Source of the DNA: Styela clava
Taxonomy: Eukaryota
NCBI RefSeq assembly: GCF_964204865.1
Contig: NC_135256.1
Span: 11,160,001-11,224,000 of the forward strand
DNA: 64,000 nucleotides
Direction of reading: 5' to 3'
A program made the position numbers and the translations under genes. Within the stretch, counting starts at the first letter, position 1, and the number at the start of each line of letters is the position of its first letter. Below, one piece after another: positions 505 to 11,497 of the stretch. The notes under the pieces were generated by a model, which was not told where the DNA came from, ran no database searches, and was given only the letters and a program-made list of their open reading frames with translations.

Positions 505-3500
505 CTCTTGAGTTACCGGTTTTTCTTCTACCTTCTCCTTATTCACTTCTACTTTCTCCTTATAATCTTCTGGAAATGCTCTTGTTCCCCATTTTACTTG
601 CACTCCATATATTTCAACCTTCAAACGTGGAAATGAGAATAAAAAACTGTATGTCAATTGTCAATGTATCGAACATCCTTCAAATTTCAAATTCTAATAT
701 TTGACAAATTTCACATTGTTGCATTTCAAATAAAGCAAAGTGTAAATAGTATGTTTCCCAGAAACAGGCATATCGAAACAACTATTCATTTTAACAAGAG
801 AGCGAAGCTCAAATATATGGACACAAAGTGGTATGGGTATGCAACCTGTCACAATGGGTACTGTAACGCAGATGAGCAGCAAATTTAAACTCACGCAAAA
901 GCAGAACTGTCAGAAATAGCAAAATTTTTAATTTTGATGATGTCATCGCACACAATAAAAGAATGCCATGGAGACCACAGAAATTTTTAAAATTAAATAA
1001 GATAGCGAAAAATACAATCTTTAACCACTGAAAATTTCGAAGCAATTGGTCCGGGAGCTAATGAGACCCGACGATTTCACAAGAAGAAGAAGAAGGAAAG
1101 AAATACTAACATGATGACCAACAACAACAACAAAATAACAAGACGATTCATAGGTCCACTTCGTGTCCGACTACGCAACTATGAACACTTTTATTAAACA
1201 TTAGCCTTGGAAGCGTTAAAGCGAGATTTTTCATTCAATTCTAAAGCCGTTAATACTCTTACCTACTTACAATAATAGGACGAATATACTGAATTATATC
1301 TCACATGTGTCACTAAAGCCCTGTATTGAGTTTTTGGTTTGAACTTGATTTCATCTCCTGAAATCCACTGAACGTTTTTAAAAACTTTTGAAGGAGCTCG
1401 AACAAATTGTCCAGGATAGTATGGTGACAAGTTGAAGTCGCCCTGATGGTGAAAATATAGATCAGCATGGATGAATTTTAAAGTTTTATAATTAGATAAA
1501 TTAAATTTAAAAAGCATTAGAACAGAGGTGAGCAACAAGCTGGCCAAGCCATTTAGTGGGGCCCTTGTTACTGTAAGGCTAAGCGATAGCAGCAAAAATA
1601 TTGCCACCTGCATTAGACCAATGTAAACCAACCCAACTAAATACTAATTTTTTTAAAACATATCACAAATATGATCCTTTTTATCAATAAAAAATATCAC
1701 ATTTTACACAAACGAAAAGTTGATATTGGAAACTGTGGGCCATTAGATTGTTTTCAAATATTTATTGACGCTATATTGCACCTGCATCAGAAATTGACAG
1801 TGTCATGTAGAAATGTTCTGGAACCTTCTACATGGTGTTGCAAGCCCATATGTTTTCATAACACAGTGGAAAAAATCACAACACATTAACTTGTTATTGT
1901 TGCACTAGAGACCTCACATGATAGCATCGTAACATTTTGGAAATGTGCCAAATTGAATTATTTGCCTCTATCAACAAATACACTGATTTATATCGCCATG
2001 CTGTTAAATTAATATCTTGCACATGTGCCGTATTTTCGGGGTTTGCCTCTTGCAGATAATGAATGTGATATTTTGTATTGAAACTGTAAATCTTGATGAG
2101 AGCATTTTGATTCTATCTAGATTTATTGCGATTAAATATGATTTTCTATCAACTCACTTCATCACTGGGATGAGGATAAACATCACTGATGAGATCTTCA
2201 TCATCAATATTTTCAAGATCCAATTTTCCTCTAAAAGCATGAAAATTTCGACAATTTAAAAAAATTACTGCTGATGATATTGAATTCTATACAAGATGAT
2301 AGATAATTTACTAATCAAACAAGACAAGCTACATAGCATAAATAATTTACCATATAAGACTAGAAGTCTGTCTGACCAGGACGAAAAGGAAAATCAAATA
2401 TTACCATATCAAATATATATAAAATCATAAAATATCGTCTTAGCAACTGTTACTTTTCACGCATATTTTTGTATTTCTAAAAATGAAATGTTTTATACAA
2501 AATAGCATTGGAATAATTTGCTATAGGCTATCAATAAATACAACGCAGTATTTTAATACTATTGATCATGGTTCATGGATGTTCAAAATGAATCAAATAT
2601 TTGAATCAATTCTCAGTTAAATATTTGATTATATCCAATACTTTGAATTCTAGTTCAGGGTATGATTAAAATAGTTCATTTTCAAATTTAGGTCTCACAG
2701 CATGACCAAAAAGTATTTCATTTTTTTTTACCTGAAAACTAATGAAAACAAGATCGTATTAAATCGTTAATTATCTTAATGTTCATATTTGCGAAAGGAC
2801 AAACTAAATATTTTTGTCAACAAAAGATAGGTAATAAAAAACTGCAGCAAAGAGGAACTATTTTCTCTGTATCAGATTAGTAGCTTAGCCCTCTGAAGTT
2901 TTCAAAACTTAAATTTTCATACCTTCCTCCATTGCTGAATTTAAGTTGAAGTTTTTGAAGAACAAGTTGAACTCGGCCCAACCATGGTCCATATGATACC
3001 ATGTCATCATCTTGAAATGCCTTGACAGAACATAAACAAATGAATTCAATTTTGTACATGAAATATCCACAAAATATACCACGAGATATATTGAAATATT
3101 ATTCACAAAGAATTGAAATACACTCAGTCTTACACGCAAGTTTAATTCTTGGATTGACCCAGTGCACATGGAACCATTAACACATCAAAGACAGAGGAAT
3201 AGCAGCTAGTGGCATGACACTCAATCAACAAGTAAATAGAATGCATGTTCGAAAAAGTGTCACAACAAAATAATTCAACTTACCACTATTGGTAAAAATT
3301 CTGAAACATTTACTTTCTTCAATATTTTTGTGGTTCCAACTACTCCTATATCACCCATCACTTTCGTTTTGATTGCTGTACCGAGCTTAAAAAGGCATAA
3401 TCATTGAGTTTTAACATTGAAATGACTGTACAAAATTTACATAGAAGTATAGAAAGCACATAAAAACCCTAAACACGAACAGCAATAAGTCAATTTGAAT

Positions 3501-4982
3501 CTAATTTAGCATTAATCAATGTTTATGCATATTGAGTGCAAATCATATAAATACAGTAGTTATAGTATTCGAGTATGATGAAGATTTTAATCAAGTTTGA
3601 AATAGTAGTTCGAACAAAAAAACAAGTCATCTATTGAAAGAGCTTCGAACTATTTTGTTCAAACTTCCCTTTTTTCTTTTAAAACTTACCGGTGTGTATT
3701 TAGGATAGGATAGGATTTACATATTTATCACGGGGGAGATGAAAGTCGATAAGACGGCTTAATCATATGGCTGTTGTTAAAAAGATATATCAGTTTTAGT
3801 TATTTCATTTTTCAGGGGCATAGACTTGATGGTGGAGGAAGCCATGACCGACCAGCGGTAGCGTGAACCACCCTACGGCGGCGAGGAGTCCAGCAATCCT
3901 CTCACACATGATCATCTCTGCATGGTATTCGAACCTGCGATCCCACGAAGGGTAATCAGAGATGCGGTGGCGAGCGTATTCCTAACACATAGCACGATGC
4001 GCCACACCGCTGCGCCGTTAAATTCCATTTAACGATTTATTCACTGACTTCACTGAAAGTCGATGCAATCAGGCAATCAAGAGTATTTTACCAAGAAAAA
4101 AAATCTCCAGATAGGCAGAAGTAACAAAATTGCTTTCACGTTTTTAATTCAAAAATTGACTGAAAGTCATACCTGATACCCATTTCTAATACGAACAACA
4201 TCTCGTGGAAGACAGGATCGATCAACAACTTGAAGCTGAAAATATACATAAAAAATATCCGTGAAATGTTTAAAAATGTTTATAAAGTTTTTGTTATGTT
4301 GTGATTCGTACCTGAGATTCTTTTACAACTTCATCTTTACCATCAGGATACCATGTAACTCTGATGAATCCTTTATCTAAAGGAGTCGTTGCCAAATCCT
4401 CAAACTCAGAATCTGATGATTCTTCAGAATCATCCATTCCTACAGTATATGGTTAAGAAAATAATTAATGCATAAATGTGATAAGAGTTATGCAAAGTAT
4501 TGAAAGGAGCTTCAATGAAATGGTCAAGACCTGCATTATAACCAAAGTAAACTTACTTTATTATATTAGATTATATCAATCTTATTTCAGAATTATGATC
4601 AAATCAAAAACGCTAAATTCTGAGATCATGATTCTATTTGTCATTGAGCTTGAGAAAATTTGAGTCGGACAAATTTAAAATATATTTAAGCTGTTACAGT
4701 GTTATTTGCATGTTATAATTTATTTTGTCCATGTATGTATGGCCAGTAATATCTGTAAATGCTGATTCGGTAGGGCAATAATACTTTGTTCTTGACCCAT
4801 AACATAATTTTCAACTATAACAAACTACTCAAAGTAGAAGCACTGTACATTTTTTGCAAGACTGTAAGCTAAGATTGCAGACTTAACTTACCCCCAACTT
4901 GTTCCACAACAGCAAATTTGACAATTCCATTTCTTGATTTTCCAAAAACTAAATCATTCGGAAAAACCGAATGTTCAGACAT
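505..4982 (-). CDS. UBE2O: E2/E3 hybrid ubiquitin-protein ligase UBE2O, 5' portion (gene continues off the left edge). Exons approx. 4982-4892, 4439-4312, 4235-4173, 3385-3284, 3020-2923, 2230-2158, 1442-1305, 618-~505
   Basis: Manually spliced GT-AG exons give MSEHSVFPNDLVFGKSRNGIVKFAVV..GFIRVTWYPDGKDEVVKESQLQVVDRSCLPRDVVR..DDMVSYGPWLGRV..YYPGQFVRAPSKVFKNVQWISG. This is colinear with the UBE2O N-terminal region as I recall it (FSHDLV..VRVQWYPEG..DRSVVPRDVVR..YPGQVLIGPAKIFSSVQWLSG). Confidence 0.88.
3701..4017 (-). mobile_element. tRNA-derived SINE, older copy with an internal replacement, in a UBE2O intron
   Basis: Head (..TTCGAACCTGCG..GCGAGCGTATTCCTAAC on +), core and tail (AGGATAGGATAGGATTTACATATTTATC on +) match the family. 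Confidence 0.88.
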
Positions 4983-4984
4983 TT

Positions 4985-5042
<58 letters not shown>

Positions 5043-5307
5043 ATTCCACAATGTGGTTTATGCAATATATAAAAATCATAAAATAATAAATGAACAACAA
5101 TAACCAAGTATACAAAAATAACAAAGCATTTCATTACAGTCCATTGATTGTATTGTCCATAGTATCCCATTGCCATTGATATGTCCATCATGTAATTTCC
5201 ATAATCCATAATGTTTGATCATTATTTATATTTTTTAGTATTAATTATTAAAAAAAAAAATTTTAATATCTATTAGTTTTGATACTATATATCACATAGT
5301 TAAAAAT

Positions 5308-8300
5308 TCACAAGTTATTATAAATGATATCTAGTTCTCTTGTAAAATTAGGATATTGTCTCAACTTTTCTATATTTCTTCTTGCTATAAGTGACTTCTT
5401 AATTTTCATGATTACATTGCTAACATTTGGATTAACTTTTTGAAAAATTACTGTATTCCTTTCAAGCCAAATTTTGTGTCTGGCAGTGCAAAATAATAAT
5501 ATTATAGCATTCCGTTCTATTTTGGACAAATGTGAATAACATAGGTGAGTTAAATCTAGTAAAATACAAGTCTTGTAATTATTATTCAGTACACAATGAT
5601 TGATTTTTAATGCAACAGAAAAAATATAATCAAAAACATTTTGCGTAAAAGGACATTTCCAAAATAAATGAGAAACAAACTCAGGTTCTTGTGTGCAAAA
5701 CACACATAAATCATTCCCAGAAATATGTTTAATTCTGGGCTTTACTTTAACAGAAAGAATATCCCACATTAATTTAAAATTGAAAGTTTTTATGTTATTG
5801 GACAATATCTTACAATGTATTTCAGAGCAGGCTCCTTCAATTGTACCATTACGAAGAAATACAATTCTGTTTCCGCCCTTCAATTTATTCACAATTTTAT
5901 TATATAGTACCCTATGTTTTCCTTGTTTTAAATCATCCCCGGTTATGTTATATTGTCTAAGAAAATTAAGCAACTCTCCATAATATTTATAAGGAAAAAA
6001 AGCATGTGTCACATTATTATTAATCGGTAAATTAAGTAATAAACAAAGTTGTTGTCCAATATTATATTCAATAATATTGAATACTGATTGTCTACAATAC
6101 TCAATTTTGTTACTAATCCTATCACAATAATAGTCGAATGCAGCCATTACATATAAACACATAGTAAATAAAGGAATATTTATCATGTCATAGCCTCCAA
6201 CAGCCTTGTTTTTGCACAGTGTCTCAATTTTCAATATGTTTCTGCCATTAAATATAAACTTTTCTACAATTTCATTCACTTGTTTTGCAATTTTTAATGG
6301 GATGGGATATAATCTTGCACAGTATAAAAACAAAGGTAGAATTTTCAATTTTATTATCAGACATTTTCCATCTAATGATAATGGAATATTTGAAAGTTCA
6401 TCTATTACAGTTTTTGCATTATCTAAACAGTATTGCCAGTTTTCATCGCTGGTATCATGATTTGAAACCACCACTCCAAGTATGTTTAAAGTCAAGACAA
6501 CAGGTACTTGTGAAAAAAAATTAGGATTGCTCCATATTCCTAATTTTAAAAGTTTAGTCTTCTCTATGTTCAACTTCATTCCAGTTGCTAATTTGAATCT
6601 TGTCATCAAATCCATTGCAGAATATACAGAGCTTTTGTTACATAGAGTCAATGTGACATCGTCTGCATAACTAATGTGTTTAATTTCTCTGTTGTGTGGT
6701 ATTTTTAAGCCAATAATTTCTTTATGGGAATTAATTTTAATTAGGAGAGGTTCAATTGCTATGATAAATAAAAATAAACTTAACGGATCTCCTTGACGAA
6801 TTCCTCTATCAAGCTTTATAGTTTCGCTTAAGTATCCATTCATAATCACTCTGGTTTCCGATTCCTTGTATAATGTCTGAATTAATTTTATAAATTTATC
6901 TTTAAAACCGAATTTTTGAAGCACTTGGAAAAGGTAATCAAGGTCAACACTATCAAAAGCTTTGTTAAAATCCAACGAGATTAATGACGATTCTCCATGT
7001 TTATTATGTTCTTGAGTACATAAATCCCTCAACAAAATGAGATTTTCAGATATTCTTCTTCCCGGAATTGCATACTGATGTCTATCTATGATGTCAGGTA
7101 ATACACATTTTAACCTATTTGCCAATATTTTTGTAAAGATCTTATAGTCTGTATTCAATAATGCTATTGGTCTGTAATTTTCTATTTGGTCTGGTTCTCC
7201 CTTTTTATAAATTAAAGTAGTATATCCCAATTTCATGTCTTTTGTTATTTGACAATTTTCAAATATTTCTTCCAATACTTCAAAGAATTCTTTTTTTATG
7301 ATTTCCCAGCATTTTTTATAGAATTCAGCACTTATTCCATCAGGTCCTGGAGTCTTGTCTTCCTTGAGGGCTTTGATAGTTATCCAAACTTCATCCAAAT
7401 TAATAGGGGTCTCTAAAGTTTCTGCATCATATTCTTGTAATTTTATTGTTTCAGGAATATTTTCTATAAAAATCTTTTGGGTCTCCATATTGTTTTGTTG
7501 TTTTTTGTATAAATTTTGATAAAAATTTTTGACTATGGACATTTTTTCATATATTTTTTCTTGTGTGGTACCTTCTTCATTTTTCAATTTGGTGATATAA
7601 CATTCTTTGTTCTTTTTTCGCAGCTTTTTGAAAAAATACTTGTTGCATTTTTCATGTGTGTCATAATGTTGTGCTAAGTTTAAAATTCTAATTTTTTCAC
7701 TTTTTTGTCTTTGTTTTGAAATCAATTCTTTTTTTAATTTATTGAATGTAGTCAACACTTTATCTCCTCTATCTAATCTTTCTTTCAATTCTTCCAATTG
7801 TTTCATCCCTCTATTATATTCAGCTTTTGCTTCCCATGCTATTTTAATTGAATGTTTGATCACCAAATCTTTAATCTTTTTCTTTATTTCTTGCCACCAT
7901 TGAGTTTTTGTATCAAATAAAACTTTTAATGTGCACCAACTATTCCATTTGTTCTGGAAGTCTTCAATAAAACTTTGGTTATTATAGACTGAAACATTAT
8001 TTTTCCAAAATCCGTGTCCCTTTTCTTCCAATTTACTAATAATCTGAATATCGACCGAGTACATGTCATGATCCGAGTTATATGTTGGTGAACAATATAT
8101 GTTGGTTATATGACATAGCCTATGAGAACAATATAAACGATCTAATCTGGCTTGTATTGTGTTATTTCTCCAGGTATAGAAGGTATTACTATGAGAAAGG
8201 AAATCCACAGAATCGATCAAGTTAAAAGTTTCTACAAGGTCATTCAATGCTTCAGACACATATTCTTTCTTGGCTCTTTTATTACTTGTTCTATCTTTAT

Positions 8301-8760
8301 CTATATCATGAACACAGTTCATATCACCACCAAAAACTGTTGCATGTTGAGAATATAGGAATCTGTAAATACCGTTGTAAAAATTTTCCTGTATTCTAAT
8401 GTTAGTTCGACAAGGGGCATAAATATTAACCAAATGAATTTTTTCACCATGTATATCCACTTCAGCAGTAAGAACTCTTCCATCGTTGTCGAATGTGACA
8501 TTATAAAACGAAAAACTTGACATCTTTGATTTTAGTAATATAGCTACCCCTCTCGAGTTTGAATTACCATTATTCCATATGCTGGTGCCATGTCTCCATT
8601 CTCTACGCCATGTTAGTTCAACATCGGTAGTGCAGTGTGTCTCTTGGAGAAAAATTATATCTGCCTTTTTTTTTGATAATTCGAAGAATACATCTCTACG
8701 TTTTTGATTGTCTCTAAGGCCATTAACATTAAGTGTGAGAATCGTCAAATAAATTACCAT
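5308..8760 (-). CDS. LINE ORF2p: APE endonuclease + reverse transcriptase + C-terminal Cys/His motif (~1150 aa from the first ATG at 8760)
   Basis: Endonuclease motifs LNVNG, LQETH, NIYAP, GDMN, RLD, SDH; RT motifs PGPDG, YRPIALLN, DFNKAFD, GIRQGDPLS, YADD; C-terminal CVFC..E..HLFWKC. No stops or frameshifts. Confidence 0.97.
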   Translation of the reverse strand: MVIYLTILTLNVNGLRDNQKRRDVFFELSKKKADIIFLQETHCTTDVELTWRREWRHGTSIWNNGNSNSRGVAILLKSKMSSFSFYNVTFDNDGRVLTAEVDIHGEKIHLVNIYAPCRTNIRIQENFYNGIYRFLYSQHATVFGGDMNCVHDIDKDRTSNKRAKKEYVSEALNDLVETFNLIDSVDFLSHSNTFYTWRNNTIQARLDRLYCSHRLCHITNIYCSPTYNSDHDMYSVDIQIISKLEEKGHGFWKNNVSVYNNQSFIEDFQNKWNSWCTLKVLFDTKTQWWQEIKKKIKDLVIKHSIKIAWEAKAEYNRGMKQLEELKERLDRGDKVLTTFNKLKKELISKQRQKSEKIRILNLAQHYDTHEKCNKYFFKKLRKKNKECYITKLKNEEGTTQEKIYEKMSIVKNFYQNLYKKQQNNMETQKIFIENIPETIKLQEYDAETLETPINLDEVWITIKALKEDKTPGPDGISAEFYKKCWEIIKKEFFEVLEEIFENCQITKDMKLGYTTLIYKKGEPDQIENYRPIALLNTDYKIFTKILANRLKCVLPDIIDRHQYAIPGRRISENLILLRDLCTQEHNKHGESSLISLDFNKAFDSVDLDYLFQVLQKFGFKDKFIKLIQTLYKESETRVIMNGYLSETIKLDRGIRQGDPLSLFLFIIAIEPLLIKINSHKEIIGLKIPHNREIKHISYADDVTLTLCNKSSVYSAMDLMTRFKLATGMKLNIEKTKLLKLGIWSNPNFFSQVPVVLTLNILGVVVSNHDTSDENWQYCLDNAKTVIDELSNIPLSLDGKCLIIKLKILPLFLYCARLYPIPLKIAKQVNEIVEKFIFNGRNILKIETLCKNKAVGGYDMINIPLFTMCLYVMAAFDYYCDRISNKIEYCRQSVFNIIEYNIGQQLCLLLNLPINNNVTHAFFPYKYYGELLNFLRQYNITGDDLKQGKHRVLYNKIVNKLKGGNRIVFLRNGTIEGACSEIHCKILSNNIKTFNFKLMWDILSVKVKPRIKHISGNDLCVFCTQEPEFVSHLFWKCPFTQNVFDYIFSVALKINHCVLNNNYKTCILLDLTHLCYSHLSKIERNAIILLFCTARHKIWLERNTVIFQKVNPNVSNVIMKIKKSLIARRNIEKLRQYPNFTRELDIIYNNL

Positions 8761-8821
8761 TGTGAGAGTTCTTTTTCTTGTTTTTTTTTTTAAAAGTAGA
8801 TTTGACGTTTTAACAACAACT

Positions 8822-9964
8822 TTATTCACTCATATTGTGTATATAATCTTTAGCTTCTTTCATAGTCATTATCTTTTGTTTTCTAGATGTTTTCTTTTTT
8901 CTTGGTGGTGACCTTTCAATAGAAGAAGACTTGTCCACGGTTAACTGTGAATTTTCACCTTGGTTTTGTGTATGAGGTTCTAACAAATACAAAATTGTTT
9001 TTTCTGCTGTATTGGATTGCATTTCCTCTTCTTTATTCAATGTAATTATCTCACTATTATCCTCACTGATGTCAGACATATTTCCAAACATTTCTGGCAA
9101 AAGGGTTGGACTTATGGATGATTTCTCACTGTGATCTTCACTAATTTCGTTCGCGGGAGTGCTCTGGGTTGGATTATCATTTATCAATTGTTTTTTACTA
9201 ATGTTATTTTCAGTATTATCAATTTTGTTTTTTTCTACTTGTTTGGTAATCTTTTTAGCTTCATTGTCTATTTCCTTTTCAGTTTCGTCAACTTTGGTCT
9301 GTTCTGGATTCGGTGATCTTTGTCCTGTGTCTTTATATCTTTCTAATTTTGGAATGAAATATTCACAATTATTCATTATATGGCCAGCTTTGCCACAAAT
9401 ACGACATGTTGGGGTCTGCCCCCAATATCTGACAAAAAGTGAATGTCCTTTTAATTTTACGTAACTTTGAATTGGTTTTTTCATTAAATCGTCTTTTTTT
9501 ATAAAAAATCTTCGTATGCCATTTTTCATGTTGAACCTATCTTTCAATATAAGTACTTCTCCTATTGTTCCGTGATTTTCTTCAAAGTGTTCTTTAATTT
9601 CTTTATTTTCCATTGGGCATGGCACATTGTGTACGAATACTGCCACATTTTCCGGTACATAAAGTCTATGAAAAGGAAGTGTTTCTGCACCTACTTTTTT
9701 AAGCTCCCATAATTTCTTATCCACATCAATAGCTGTTGCTCTTGTTTTAAATGTTAAGTCCACCGTGTACCTGGACGTAAGTACAAATCCGTCCACAGTG
9801 TCGAATACAATATTCAGTTTTCTAAAAAATTGCCATATATCTTCTCTTCGAATTACTTTTTCATCATTAAATTTCAATGCCATGCACTTCGTTCTGTCTA
9901 ATGTGTTTCTCTCCTCCTCATCTTTTTTACGATTCTGTTTCAGTTTCTCAGAGTATAGAGACAT
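8822..9964 (-). CDS. LINE ORF1p (RRM-like region + CCHC zinc knuckle, acidic/basic low-complexity tail), Tx1-type
   Basis: Intact ORF directly upstream of ORF2. Contains VFVHNVP..I..HF...G.I (RRM-like) and Y.GQTPTCRICGKAGHIMNNC (CX2CX4HX4C). First in-frame ATG at 9964. Confidence 0.9.
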   Translation of the reverse strand: MSLYSEKLKQNRKKDEEERNTLDRTKCMALKFNDEKVIRREDIWQFFRKLNIVFDTVDGFVLTSRYTVDLTFKTRATAIDVDKKLWELKKVGAETLPFHRLYVPENVAVFVHNVPCPMENKEIKEHFEENHGTIGEVLILKDRFNMKNGIRRFFIKKDDLMKKPIQSYVKLKGHSLFVRYWGQTPTCRICGKAGHIMNNCEYFIPKLERYKDTGQRSPNPEQTKVDETEKEIDNEAKKITKQVEKNKIDNTENNISKKQLINDNPTQSTPANEISEDHSEKSSISPTLLPEMFGNMSDISEDNSEIITLNKEEEMQSNTAEKTILYLLEPHTQNQGENSQLTVDKSSSIERSPPRKKKTSRKQKIMTMKEAKDYIHNMSE

Positions 9965-10521
9965 CTTCGGACATCGTTTCACACTTTCAACAACAGGATT
10001 TTATTAAAGTTATAATTTAGATACTAATTATAGTTAAACTTAATCAAAATCCTTAAACGGAGACTTGACTTGACTTGACTGCGACTTTCGACCGATGAAC
10101 AGAAAAGTCTTTGTGAATTTCGATAGTTAGATCACTGCTTTTCGTTTTGAATACGATTGCTCAACAAACACCCTGCAATGAAGACAAAAGTCGAGCGCGA
10201 ACTGTCGTTCGCCGCATGTACTCGGGGAAATCCCAGCAACACAATCAAACAAAGTCAATCAAACCGCGTCGCATGGTGGCGAACATTAATTTCTCCTATT
10301 TAAATTCAGAAGTTCACCGCCGCTCAAATAAGCTGGCAAACAGGTTCAATTTTAGATATCAACTACTCAAGATGTTAAATATGTGGGCAACAGTTAGAAA
10401 CTTGAGTTTTATTAGACATATATGTTGATAGGTTTATTTATTAATAGATTTAAAAATGGTCGCTGTCTATGATGGAAATTTCTTCCTCAGCTTCGCCGGG
10501 GTCATAGCGTATTCCCAAACT

Positions 10522-10524
<3 letters not shown>

Positions 10525-10553
<29 letters not shown>
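10525..10553. repeat. (TA)n microsatellite
   Basis: About 14 consecutive TA units. Confidence 0.95.
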
Positions 10554-10558
<5 letters not shown>

Positions 10559-11497
10559 CTCGATACACCGAAGCTAAAGACTTCGTGCGCTACCAACGAC
10601 TAACGTGCGCTACTATATATACTTCCAGTAAACAAAAAAGTTTGAATGTTCTCATCTTGCGTTTCTTCCTTCCGCACGGGTCTAAAGCGAACATGTACCA
10701 CTTCTTTCAATCCAACATCTATCTTGCACGTTTTGAATCTTACTAAGGTTTTGTTGGCTTCCCTGATTCCGTCTGTAATCAGTTCTATCCTGATTTTATC
10801 TTTTTTTTTTCTCGTCTTTTATGCCGATTATGGAGTCTAAATAAACACACATTGGTGAAACCGATGCAAAAATATTTAGTTTGCTAATATAAATTTGATC
10901 TTTCAACAAAACTGCGCTACCAAAAAACAGTGCAGTTGTTCAGGGAGATGAGGCAAACTTTTAGTTCTTATTTAATCGTACCTAACAAATGGTAAAAGCT
11001 CGTGATTTTATTGCCATTCTATTCTAAATGAACAGCTATATTGTCCTGCCAGACTTTTTCCCACCTCTATGGGCAACCTATAGCATACACCACCTCCCTC
11101 ATTTCTCAGTCTTGTCCCGTCAGACAGATATTGACGATTTTTTAACAACATATCATAATTATAAAGACAAAATAAAATGTGAATTACATATATAAATGGT
11201 ATTGCATGTTTGTCCACCAATGTAAACAATTAAAACTGGATTGAAATTCATGGCTAAACCAAGTAGTGATGTTCATTAATTGTAGAATTTAAATCCATAT
11301 TGAAAAATTAAGCACCAGAATTATTCAAAATGAATGTTCTATTTCCTCTACAAAATATCTTGGATACGCATCAAAAATTCAACTTTTGATTTAGGCATCA
11401 ATCTGCACATGCGGAACAAATTTGGAACCCTTTTTGTCATGTCTGGTGCTAAATTCATGAGCACGACACTTCCTCAGTGTCAACACGAAATTCAAAA

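What the first reader, a model, noticed from the sequence alone, without database searches (positions are those of the whole stretch)
4980..5280. LINE 3' UTR is a ~280-nt AG-free zone whose first AG forms at the poly(A)/target junction, 3 nt before the UBE2O ATG: a possible self-rescuing, acceptor-building retrotransposon
Seen: on the element's sense strand there is no AG between 5269 and 4988. By my count all 31 G residues in 5041-5269 are preceded by T or G, never A, although A makes up roughly a third of bases. The zone opens with branch-point-like CTAAT (5276-5272) and TACTAA (~5241-5236) around a U11 tract, and contains a long U/GU-rich stretch (~5125-5065). The first AG is A53|G, reading ..AAAG/AAA-ATG-TCT-GAA into UBE2O. 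Established: distant branch points with long AG-exclusion zones select the first downstream AG, and ascidians resolve operons by SL trans-splicing at acceptors that abut the upstream cistron. Inference: the element may supply a new outron/3' splice site so the interrupted gene is still expressed, which would also remove the many upstream ATGs in this UTR. Alternative: the AG depletion only protects the element RNA from splicing, or is a by-product of ATGG/TG low complexity.
Basis: partly seen in the sequence, partly recalled or inferred. Interest (0 to 1): 0.9.

Follow-up and report, generated by a model that had tools for sequence, protein, structure and literature searches.

The report
AG-free LINE tail beside UBE2O start
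A very young L1-type jumping gene sits in the 5' leader of the UBE2O gene of the sea squirt Styela clava. Its ~230-base tail really does lack the dinucleotide AG, and this holds across seven related LINE families, but the AG next to the start codon was most likely already in the target, so the 'acceptor-building, self-rescuing' idea is not supported.

Summary
On the minus strand there is no AG from 5270 to 4988: 229 nt of LINE 3'UTR, the T at 5040 and A53. All 31 G residues follow T or G.

Seven diverged LINE families of this clade in the same genome (Styela clava) share the trait. Their 3'UTR cores hold 1 AG against ~63 expected, while the complement CT is at its expected level. So the depletion is strand-specific and looks selected at the RNA level.

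The interpretation mostly fails.
- In the four other copies where a duplication could be read, the base after the poly(A) belongs to the target-site duplication (AAAG... in three).
- Here the 5' flank ends in AAAGA (10112-10108), matching the 3' junction.
- A spliced mRNA contig from another animal aligns to 10208-10108 and to exon 1, stopping exactly at 10108. The likely uninterrupted allele therefore has an ordinary 5'UTR running through CACAAAG/AAAATG.
- The AG thus predates the insertion and is not the native acceptor.
- The insertion looks heterozygous (depth 31.6 against 59.2) and very recent.

Most likely the AG exclusion protects the element's own U-rich tail from acting as a splice or trans-splice acceptor. 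Rescue of UBE2O is untested.

The parts
4892..4982 (-). UBE2O exon 1. ATG at 4982-4980; the donor GT follows 4892.
   Evidence: The translation MSEHSVFPND... equals the N-terminus of the annotated Styela clava UBE2O-like protein. Exon 2 matches Pfam SH3-A_UBE2O. The exon1-exon2 junction is seen in RNA contigs of X5, X9 and X10.
4985..4989 (-). 3' copy of the putative target-site duplication AAAGA. It contains the 'first AG' (A4987, G4986).
   Evidence: It matches the 5' flank AAAGA at 10112-10108. Other copies have TSDs that start with AAAG.
4987..5039 (-). Poly(A) tail of the insertion, 53 A. It is the longest of the family; other copies have 9-42.
4988..5270 (-). AG-free zone: 229 nt of 3'UTR, the T at 5040, and the poly(A).
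5040..5307 (-). LINE 3'UTR, 268 nt. It runs: two AGs near the stop codon, CTAAT, a U11 tract, TACTAA, UGG(A) repeats, a U-rich block, a terminal hairpin, then CAT.
   Evidence: The whole-UTR fold z-score is only -1.39.
5235..5276 (-). Branch-point-like CTAAT (5276-5272), U11 tract (5260-5250) and TACTAA (5240-5235).
   Evidence: A CTAAT-type motif next to a U tract appears in the first ~60 nt of the 3'UTR in all seven families.
5046..5056 (-). Terminal palindrome CCACATTGTGG (stem CCAC/GTGG), 6 nt before the poly(A).
   Evidence: It is conserved, with stem changes (CCACAACGTGG, CACTCAATGAGTG), in several families.
5308..8829 (-). ORF2, 1173 aa, intact. It carries the endonuclease, reverse transcriptase and zf-RVT domains.
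   Evidence: Pfam. Human L1 ORF2p matches at E 1e-72 over residues 27-904.
8822..9964 (-). ORF1, intact, about 380 aa from the ATG at 9964. No Pfam match.
9965..10057 (-). LINE 5'UTR. Homology to other full-length copies starts at about 10057 or 10044.
10058..10071 (-). 14-nt filler AAGTCAAGTCTCCG at the 5' junction.
10072..10108 (-). 37-nt segment, 97% identical to a single-copy site on another chromosome (C3:11602091-11602127). That site lies 40 nt downstream of a TATAAATA.
   Evidence: The DNA-contig graph branches at 10108.
10108..10112 (-). 5' copy of the putative target-site duplication AAAGA. It is the end of the native 5'UTR.
10108..10208 (-). Native UBE2O 5'UTR, at least 100 nt, now separated from the ATG by the insertion.
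   Evidence: One X10 mRNA contig (depth 23.5) accounts exactly for the depth bins over 10108-10131 (24 nt), 10132-10207 (76 nt) and exon 1.

Best explanation
This is a very recent, apparently heterozygous insertion of an intact L1-superfamily LINE, about 5.1 kb including a chimeric 5' end. It lies in the sense orientation in the 5'UTR of Styela clava UBE2O, 4 nt upstream of the ATG.

The AG-free tail is not peculiar to this insertion. It is a conserved, strand-specific property of the 3'UTRs of this whole LINE clade. All seven families share the same layout: a CUAAU-like motif, a U tract, UGG(A) repeats, a U-rich block, a terminal hairpin and the poly(A).

The most likely reason (inferred, not shown) is selection on the element's own RNA. 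A U-rich tail with a branch-point-like motif would act as an unpaired 3' splice or trans-splice acceptor at the first AG, in a host expected to do SL trans-splicing. So every AG between that module and the poly(A) site has been purged.

The first AG then falls in flanking DNA. It is often right at the junction, because the element integrates at AAA(G/T) sites and the duplicated target begins AAAG. At UBE2O that AG was already present and was not the native acceptor. Any effect on UBE2O expression is incidental, and the insertion allele is more likely impaired than rescued.
For: - Organism and gene: the cellulose synthase GT2+GH6 pair marks a tunicate. The exact protein is annotated as Styela clava UBE2O-like on this same contig.
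- Element: EN+RT+zf-RVT, L1 ORF2p at E 1e-72, intact ORFs.
- Age: 5-8 copies at 97-100% identity and the longest poly(A) of the family.
- Heterozygosity: the junction contig 10029-10137 has depth 31.6 against 59.2 for the unique flank.
- AG exclusion across families. Core 1 observed against 62.8 expected; CT O/E about 1; the UTRs are essentially unalignable (62-68% global identity).
- AGs reappear in decayed or truncated copies (L010 has 4, L012 has 1).
- Target origin of the junction AG: TSDs; AAAGA on both sides here.
- The mRNA contig stops at exactly 10108.
- The G's neighbours are asymmetric: GA is at expectation while AG is zero. This argues against a simple local-composition effect.
Against: - ORF2 contains pyrimidine-rich stretches followed closely by AG. 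Acceptor avoidance is therefore not element-wide and would have to be specific to the UTR module.
- No RNA evidence here shows that an AG placed in this UTR would be spliced.
The Ciona SL was not found in the genome.
- G residues sit largely in UGG(A)/UG motifs, so a motif constraint could produce the same pattern.
- The TSD at this copy is only 5 bp, against 13-14 bp in others. The poly(A) junction was masked in the read tool, so the uninterrupted-allele junction was not read base by base.
- Host 3'UTRs and other LINE clades could not be checked as controls.
Confidence: 0.5

Rival explanations
1. The 3'UTR is an AG-less outron or 3' splice module. It directs the spliceosome to the junction AG, so the interrupted UBE2O is SL-trans-spliced 3 nt before its ATG and still expressed: a self-rescuing element.
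For: - The layout (CUAAU-like motif, U tract, then AG exclusion to the end) is conserved in seven families.
- G follows the poly(A) in 16 of 36 copies.
- Ciona operons have the upstream poly(A) site abutting the downstream acceptor AG (PMC1488885).
- Long AG exclusion zones with distant branch points are established (PMC1431707).
Against: - The AG is target-derived, not built.
- The native mRNA reads through it.
- 53 A immediately upstream is the opposite of a pyrimidine tract.
- The element's own poly(A) site lies upstream of the AG.
- Half of the insertions have T, not G, after the tail.
- Selection on an element to spare rare sense-oriented 5'UTR hits would be weak.
- The insertion looks heterozygous and young, so nothing shows it is tolerated.
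Confidence: 0.1
2. By-product of motif content. The UTR is A/U filler plus functional UGG(A), UGA and UGU motifs (protein-binding sites, poly(A)-control elements, recognition of the 3' end by the reverse transcriptase). G occurs only inside those motifs, so AG is absent without being selected against as such.
For: - There are 4-9 UGG(A) repeats in the centre of every family's UTR.
- TG O/E is 1.6 and GG O/E is 1.7-2.4.
- The terminal hairpin is conserved.
Against: - Single G's in the U-rich half are not in a recognisable motif, yet they too are never preceded by A.
- GA is at expectation while AG is zero.
- Exclusion holds over unalignable sequences in seven families.
- The whole-UTR fold is not unusually stable, z -1.39.
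Confidence: 0.25
3. Mutational bias. Repeated A-to-I editing of the element's RNA, which favours A followed by G, then reverse transcription, converted AG to GG over time wherever coding constraint was absent.
For: GG is enriched. The depletion is specific to the sense strand.
Against: - The UTR remains 37% A with many UA contexts that editing also favours.
- The missing AGs are made up mostly by TG, not GG.
- The exclusion is complete, not graded.
- Conserved AGs persist just upstream of the zone.
Confidence: 0.07
4. 3'-end formation coupled to the first downstream AG, as proposed for Ciona operons without intercistronic DNA. The element needs an AG-free run so that processing happens at or beyond its end.
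For: - There is no canonical AATAAA in the last 40 nt of most families.
- One copy (L023) has a tail A4-G-A12 that could be a one-base carry-over of a parent's junction AG.
- Ciona precedent: PMC1488885.
Against: All copies end at the same internal position (…CAT, then A's) regardless of flank. The RNA 3' end is therefore set inside the element.
Confidence: 0.05

Closest known systems
L1/Tx1-group LINEs (APE-type non-LTR retrotransposons with poly(A) tails)
   Same: Two ORFs; ORF2 with endonuclease, reverse transcriptase and a C-terminal zinc-binding region; poly(A) tail; variable target-site duplications starting in an A run; frequent 5' truncation; extra or chimeric sequence at 5' junctions.
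   Different: A ~240-270-nt 3'UTR with near-total AG exclusion and a CUAAU + U-tract module, conserved across families. To my knowledge this has not been described for L1/Tx1 elements. Human L1 3'UTRs are purine-rich with many AGs (own knowledge).
AG dinucleotide exclusion zones downstream of distant branch points (Gooding et al. 2006, PMC1431707)
   Same: A branch-point-like motif and U tract, followed by hundreds of nt without AG.
   Different: There the zone ends at a used 3' splice site of a host exon. Here it ends at a poly(A) site inside a transposon, and no splicing to the next AG was shown.
Ciona operons without intercistronic DNA (Satou et al. 2006, PMC1488885)
   Same: The upstream transcript's 3' end lies next to an AG just before the downstream cistron; upstream cistrons often lack AATAAA.
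   Different: Here 53 genomic A's separate the element's end from the AG. UBE2O is not natively spliced at that AG. No SL evidence was obtained.
Introners: transposons that supply or co-opt splice sites and become introns (Gozashti et al. 2025, PMC12130899, which lists Styela clava among introner-containing taxa)
   Same: The idea of a mobile element whose ends, together with the duplicated target, create splice signals that neutralise the insertion.
   Different: There is no GT donor at the 5' junction (AAAGA/CTTTTC). The element is a 5-kb autonomous LINE. No spliced-out form was seen.
Chimeric L1 retrocopies made by template switching (for example U6-L1 chimeras; own knowledge)
   Same: A 37-nt piece matching a single-copy site elsewhere in the genome is fused to the element's 5' end with 14 nt of filler.
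   Different: The donor is not a known small RNA; Rfam gives no match. 5' transduction from an unassembled source copy is not excluded.

Membership tests
L1-superfamily LINE | ORF2 with an APE-type endonuclease followed by a reverse transcriptase | tested here: met
   Pfam Exo_endo_phos E 1.6e-16, RVT_1 E 1.1e-34, zf-RVT. Human L1 ORF2p E 1e-72 over residues 27-904.
L1-superfamily LINE | Poly(A) tail and target-site duplications of variable length | tested here: met
   Tails of 9-53 A. TSDs of 13-14 bp in four copies. Only 5 bp here, and none found for the C14 copy.
Tx1 clade specifically | Phylogenetic placement of the RT with Tx1 elements, and site-specific insertion | not tested
   No phylogeny was made. 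Insertions lie at many unrelated sites that share only AAA(G/T), which speaks against strict site specificity.
AG-exclusion-zone 3' splice site (distant branch point) | Branch-point consensus and pyrimidine tract at the upstream edge, with no AG until the splice site | tested here: met
   CTAAT, U11, TACTAA, then 0 AG for 283 nt. The same layout occurs in seven families.
AG-exclusion-zone 3' splice site (distant branch point) | The first downstream AG is used as a 3' splice site in RNA | tested here: inconclusive
   The read tool masked 4976-5049, so no junction could be read. The only informative contig fits the uninterrupted allele and reads through the AG.
Ciona-type SL-resolved operon | The downstream cistron carries the spliced leader at an acceptor abutting the upstream cistron's 3' end | not testable with these tools
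   The S. clava SL sequence was not found: the Ciona SL is absent, and the near-match array is a tRNA-array spacer.
Introner | The element plus its TSD provides both a GT donor and an AG acceptor, and is spliced out | tested here: not met
   The 5' junction reads AAAGA/CTTTTC, with no GT. No joint skipping the element was listed among those that could be shown.
UBE2O | N-terminal SH3-A and tandem SH3-B domains; identity to an annotated orthologue | tested here: met
   Pfam SH3-A_UBE2O E 1.6e-9 and tSH3-B_UBE2O E 4.6e-11, tested on single exons. A 1341-aa S. clava UBE2O-like protein contains the exon translations.

The most novel reading that the evidence does not exclude
The 3'UTRs of this LINE clade are functional AG-less 3' splice modules: branch point, U tract, then an enforced AG exclusion zone. 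On read-through transcripts they hand the spliceosome to the first flanking AG, which is often the AAAG of the duplicated target. Element and downstream host sequence are then resolved like a Ciona-type operon by SL trans-splicing. That would make sense-oriented insertions into 5' leaders or operons partly harmless, and would be a transposon adaptation to a trans-splicing host.
Probability: 0.1. Interest if true: 0.85.

Novelty: new variant of a known kind. Interest (0 to 1): 0.5.

Why it matters
If the AG exclusion is selected because the host trans-splices any unpaired acceptor, it would be a clear case of a transposon's non-coding sequence being shaped by the host's RNA-processing system. 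It would also give a simple sequence signature (AG observed/expected in U-rich tails) to look for in other trans-splicing animals.

The insertion itself is a natural experiment. An intact LINE sits between a housekeeping promoter with its 5'UTR and the start codon, apparently heterozygous. Allele-specific RNA data could therefore show directly whether such an allele is dead, read through or re-spliced.

As it stands, the element is an ordinary young L1-type insertion, and the striking 'acceptor-building' reading is not supported.

Tried and rejected
1. Spliced leader. I searched the genome for the Ciona SL. The only repeated near-match, on C3 at 24.85-24.96 Mb, is a spacer in a tandem tRNA gene array, not an SL RNA gene. 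The S. clava SL remains unknown to me, and the paper searches found none.

2. Hidden ORF. A 57-codon ORF runs from 5209 into the poly(A). It is rejected as coding, because indels among subfamilies are not multiples of three and large blocks come and go.

3. Global RNA structure as the constraint. The fold z-score is only -1.39. Only the terminal hairpin looks conserved.

4. Splice acceptor at 10174. I first read a gap in X9 coverage at 10176 as an acceptor (ttgcag/GG). The X10 contig carries a variant at 10176 and continues to 10208, and the X9 bin depths imply coverage beyond the gap. A variant bubble explains it better.

5. TSD search. A direct search of the window found nothing of 8 nt or more. 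The boundary was set instead by the contig-graph branch, the C3 homology and the mRNA contig. No TSD was found for the C14 copy.

   - Exons were searched one at a time by reference. I did not build or search a joined spliced model.

7. Element-wide acceptor avoidance. ORF2 contains pyrimidine-rich stretches followed by AG, so any avoidance is confined to the UTR.
Full report
**What is there**

On the minus strand the window holds, in order:
- an intact two-ORF LINE: ORF1 from the ATG at 9964 to 8822, and ORF2 at 8829-5308 (1173 aa);
- a 268-nt 3'UTR (5307-5040);
- 53 A (5039-4987);
- G4986, AAA, and the ATG at 4982-4980.

ORF2 has endonuclease, reverse-transcriptase and zf-RVT domains. It matches human L1 ORF2p at E 1e-72 over residues 27-904. 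It is therefore an L1/Tx1-group element; I did not test Tx1 placement.

The ATG opens UBE2O.
- A search with one exon returned a 1341-aa protein that begins MSEHSVFPND and contains the exon translations.
- That protein is annotated as Styela clava UBE2O-like, on a contig of exactly the length of this window's contig.
- Two isoforms from the older assembly have the same N-terminus.

Independently, the genome carries the tunicate hallmark: a cellulose-synthase GT2 domain and a GH6 domain 2 kb apart.

**Checking the observation**

- AGs on the element's strand lie at 5271 and 4987 with none between.
- In 5269-5041 (229 nt; A84, T94, C20, G31) AG is 0 against 11.4 expected. All 31 G follow T (21) or G (10). 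No AG-free sequence appeared in 200,000 shuffles.
- Among ~125,000 windows of the same length with at least 25 G in the 64 kb, only this locus has no AG.

One equally extreme zone exists for another dinucleotide: AC-free at 2087-2366, spanning a UBE2O exon. A single such run is therefore not by itself remarkable.

**Conservation makes it remarkable**

About 5-8 copies are 97-100% identical, so the family is young. All keep 0 AG.
- Subfamilies at 67-87% DNA identity have 0-4 AG against 7-12 expected.
- In an alignment of eight diverged representatives, AG has O/E 0.22. The complement CT has 0.99, GA 0.94 and TG 1.62. The depletion is strand-specific.

I then took the last 299 residues of ORF2 and collected related elements down to 43% amino-acid identity. 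Seven families with clear stop codons and poly(A) tails were compared.
- Their 3'UTRs (230-279 nt) are essentially unalignable with each other (62-68% global identity for AT-rich sequence).
- Whole UTRs hold 14 AG against 79 expected.
- Cores, from 45 nt after the stop to 15 nt before the tail, hold 1 against 62.8 (Poisson P about 1e-22 after scaling to the window-wide AG O/E of 0.86).
- The last 600 nt of each ORF2 has 23-37 AG against 32-38 expected, most near expectation.
- AGs reappear in decayed or truncated copies.

All seven share one layout:
- 0-3 AGs just after the stop;
- a CTAAT-type motif beside a U tract;
- 4-9 UGG(A) repeats;
- a U-rich block;
- a terminal hairpin in several families (CCACATTGTGG, CCACAACGTGG, CACTCAATGAGTG);
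- a few bases and then the tail.

So the branch-point-like opening and the exclusion zone are family traits, not accidents of this copy.

**Where the junction AG comes from**

The base after the poly(A) is G in 9 of 17 copies of this family and its subfamilies, and in 7 of 19 copies of the related families. It is never C: G 16, T 20, C 0 of 36 (P for no C about 2e-5).

Wherever a duplication can be read, however, the base after the tail belongs to the target:
- AAAGGTACGGTAGA (C10 copy);
- AAAGTTAGCAAAAG and (A)nGAAAAGT;
- AATACTCAGGCAT, a T-type copy.

The element evidently integrates at AAA(G/T), and the A-G step pre-exists in the target.

**The boundaries of this insertion**

Homology to other full-length copies begins at about 10057. 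Upstream of that lie 14 nt of filler and then 37 nt (10108-10072). Those 37 nt are 97% identical to a single-copy site on another chromosome, which sits 40 nt after a TATAAATA. This is a chimeric 5' end of the kind template switching produces (own knowledge).

Three independent lines put the true boundary at 10108:
- the end of that homology;
- a branch in the DNA contig graph of run X1, where a 109-nt contig bridging 10029-10137 has depth 31.6 against 59.2 for the unique flank;
- an RNA contig, described next.

The flank ends ...CACAAAGA, and the 3' junction reads A53-GA. This gives a short duplication, AAAGA.

**What RNA shows**

The read tool masked 4976-5049, so the junction could not be read, and one joint and two loose ends in X10 were dropped there. 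The depth table still allows an exact reconstruction, because each contig has a single depth.

In X10 a contig of depth 23.5 accounts for:
- the bin over exon 1: 67 nt gives 7.9;
- the next bin: 18 nt plus a depth-3.8 element contig gives 4.17;
- 9933-10131: 24 nt, that is 10108-10131, gives 2.83;
- 10132-10330: 76 nt, that is to 10207, gives 8.96.

The only exon 1 contig in X10 also carries the exon1-exon2 splice. So a spliced mRNA from another animal covers 10208-10108 and exon 1, and its match to the flank stops at exactly 10108.

The simplest reading is the uninterrupted allele: a conventional 5'UTR of at least 100 nt running through CACAAAG/AAAATG. There is no GT at 10107 that could make the element an intron. 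X9 depths fit the same picture. X5 has only exon 1.

Hence the AG 3 nt before the ATG predates the insertion and is not the native acceptor. Together with the halved depth of the junction contig, the longest poly(A) of the family and 100% identity to two other copies, this marks a very recent and probably polymorphic insertion.

**How it most likely works**

Three things are shown:
- the exclusion is strand-specific;
- it is conserved over sequences that have otherwise diverged beyond alignment;
- it begins at a branch-point-like motif with a U tract and runs to the poly(A) site.

One thing is inferred. In a host expected to trans-splice unpaired acceptors (established for Ciona, PMC1488885; assumed for Styela from general knowledge), an intronless element with a U-rich tail would be cut at the first AG after that module. 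Lineages that keep AGs out of the tail would therefore be the ones that persist.

Support for AG avoidance over simple composition: G is freely followed by A (GA at expectation) but never preceded by it.

Weaknesses: ORF2 tolerates pyrimidine-rich stretches followed by AG, no splicing assay exists, and host 3'UTRs could not be checked as controls.

**Rivals**

- A motif by-product (UGG(A), UGU) remains a serious rival.
- RNA editing is less likely. The UTR stays 37% A, and the missing AGs are replaced mainly by TG.
- Global structure is not the constraint (z -1.39).

**Comparison with known systems**

The element is an ordinary member of the L1/Tx1 group. The AG exclusion zone resembles those downstream of distant branch points (PMC1431707), but it ends at a poly(A) site rather than a used splice site. 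The arrangement recalls Ciona operons without intercistronic DNA (PMC1488885), and introners, for which S. clava is listed (PMC12130899). The defining features of both are either unmet (no donor) or untestable here (SL use). I found no paper describing AG exclusion in LINE 3'UTRs.

**Limits**

- The S. clava spliced leader was not identified.

**Verdict**

The 'acceptor-building, self-rescuing' interpretation is not supported. Interest is moderate, for the conserved AG exclusion in a trans-splicing chordate and for the natural experiment at UBE2O.

Noticed in passing
window 10072-10108 (minus strand); L044:1501-1537 (G000 C3:11602091-11602127): The insertion's 5' end carries 37 nt that are 97% identical to a single-copy site on another chromosome, 40 nt downstream of a TATAAATA, then 14 nt of AAGTC-type filler. 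It looks like a template-switch chimera or a 5' transduction. Rfam finds no known RNA there.
   Followed up: partly
G000 C3:24847563-24961794 (L052): A ~115-kb tandem array of tRNA genes, with several tRNAs per unit and units spaced ~0.5-1.9 kb. The spacer contains a 16-mer one base different from the Ciona spliced leader. It is not an SL RNA gene.
   Followed up: partly
window 6501-6920: An X10 RNA contig skips 418 nt inside ORF2, with GT..AG read on the plus strand, that is antisense to the element. Either an antisense transcript is spliced, or a copy with an internal deletion is expressed.
   Followed up: no
window 5050-5160: In run X9 a 1370-nt contig of high depth (168) ends in the last 111 nt of this LINE's 3'UTR, and the rest lies elsewhere. 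A truncated copy is probably embedded in an abundant transcript at another locus.
   Followed up: no
window 10686-10846: A ~160-nt interspersed repeat with hundreds of copies at ~71-81% identity across all chromosomes (401 first-look candidates). It lies upstream of the UBE2O promoter region, next to a (TA)17 microsatellite at about 10523-10556.
   Followed up: no
window 2087-2366 (minus strand): A 280-nt stretch without AC on the gene's sense strand, spanning a UBE2O exon and its flanks. It is the only other dinucleotide-free zone of comparable extremity in the window. No repeat or motif explains it, so it is probably chance.
   Followed up: partly
window 5039-10208 in relation to the UBE2O promoter: The insertion places an intact LINE directly behind a housekeeping gene's promoter and 5'UTR in the sense orientation. 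This copy could therefore be transcribed from the UBE2O promoter. LINE RNA contigs are present in all three RNA runs but cannot be assigned to a copy.
   Followed up: no
L023 (G000 C6:6264285-6264369 region): One truncated copy has a tail reading A4-G-A12 before its TSD. This could be a one-base carry-over of a parent copy's junction AG, or a simple substitution.
   Followed up: no
G000 C9:16177457-16180164 (L054, L055): Cellulose-synthase GT2 and GH6 domains lie 2 kb apart on one strand: the tunicate cellulose synthase gene.
   Followed up: partly
L006 (G000 C9:13084107 copy), 3' flank: The flank after the poly(A) holds a direct repeat: GTATACCTTTGTGAGTTTTG occurs twice, ~58 nt apart. This may be a local duplication at the insertion site.
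   Followed up: no
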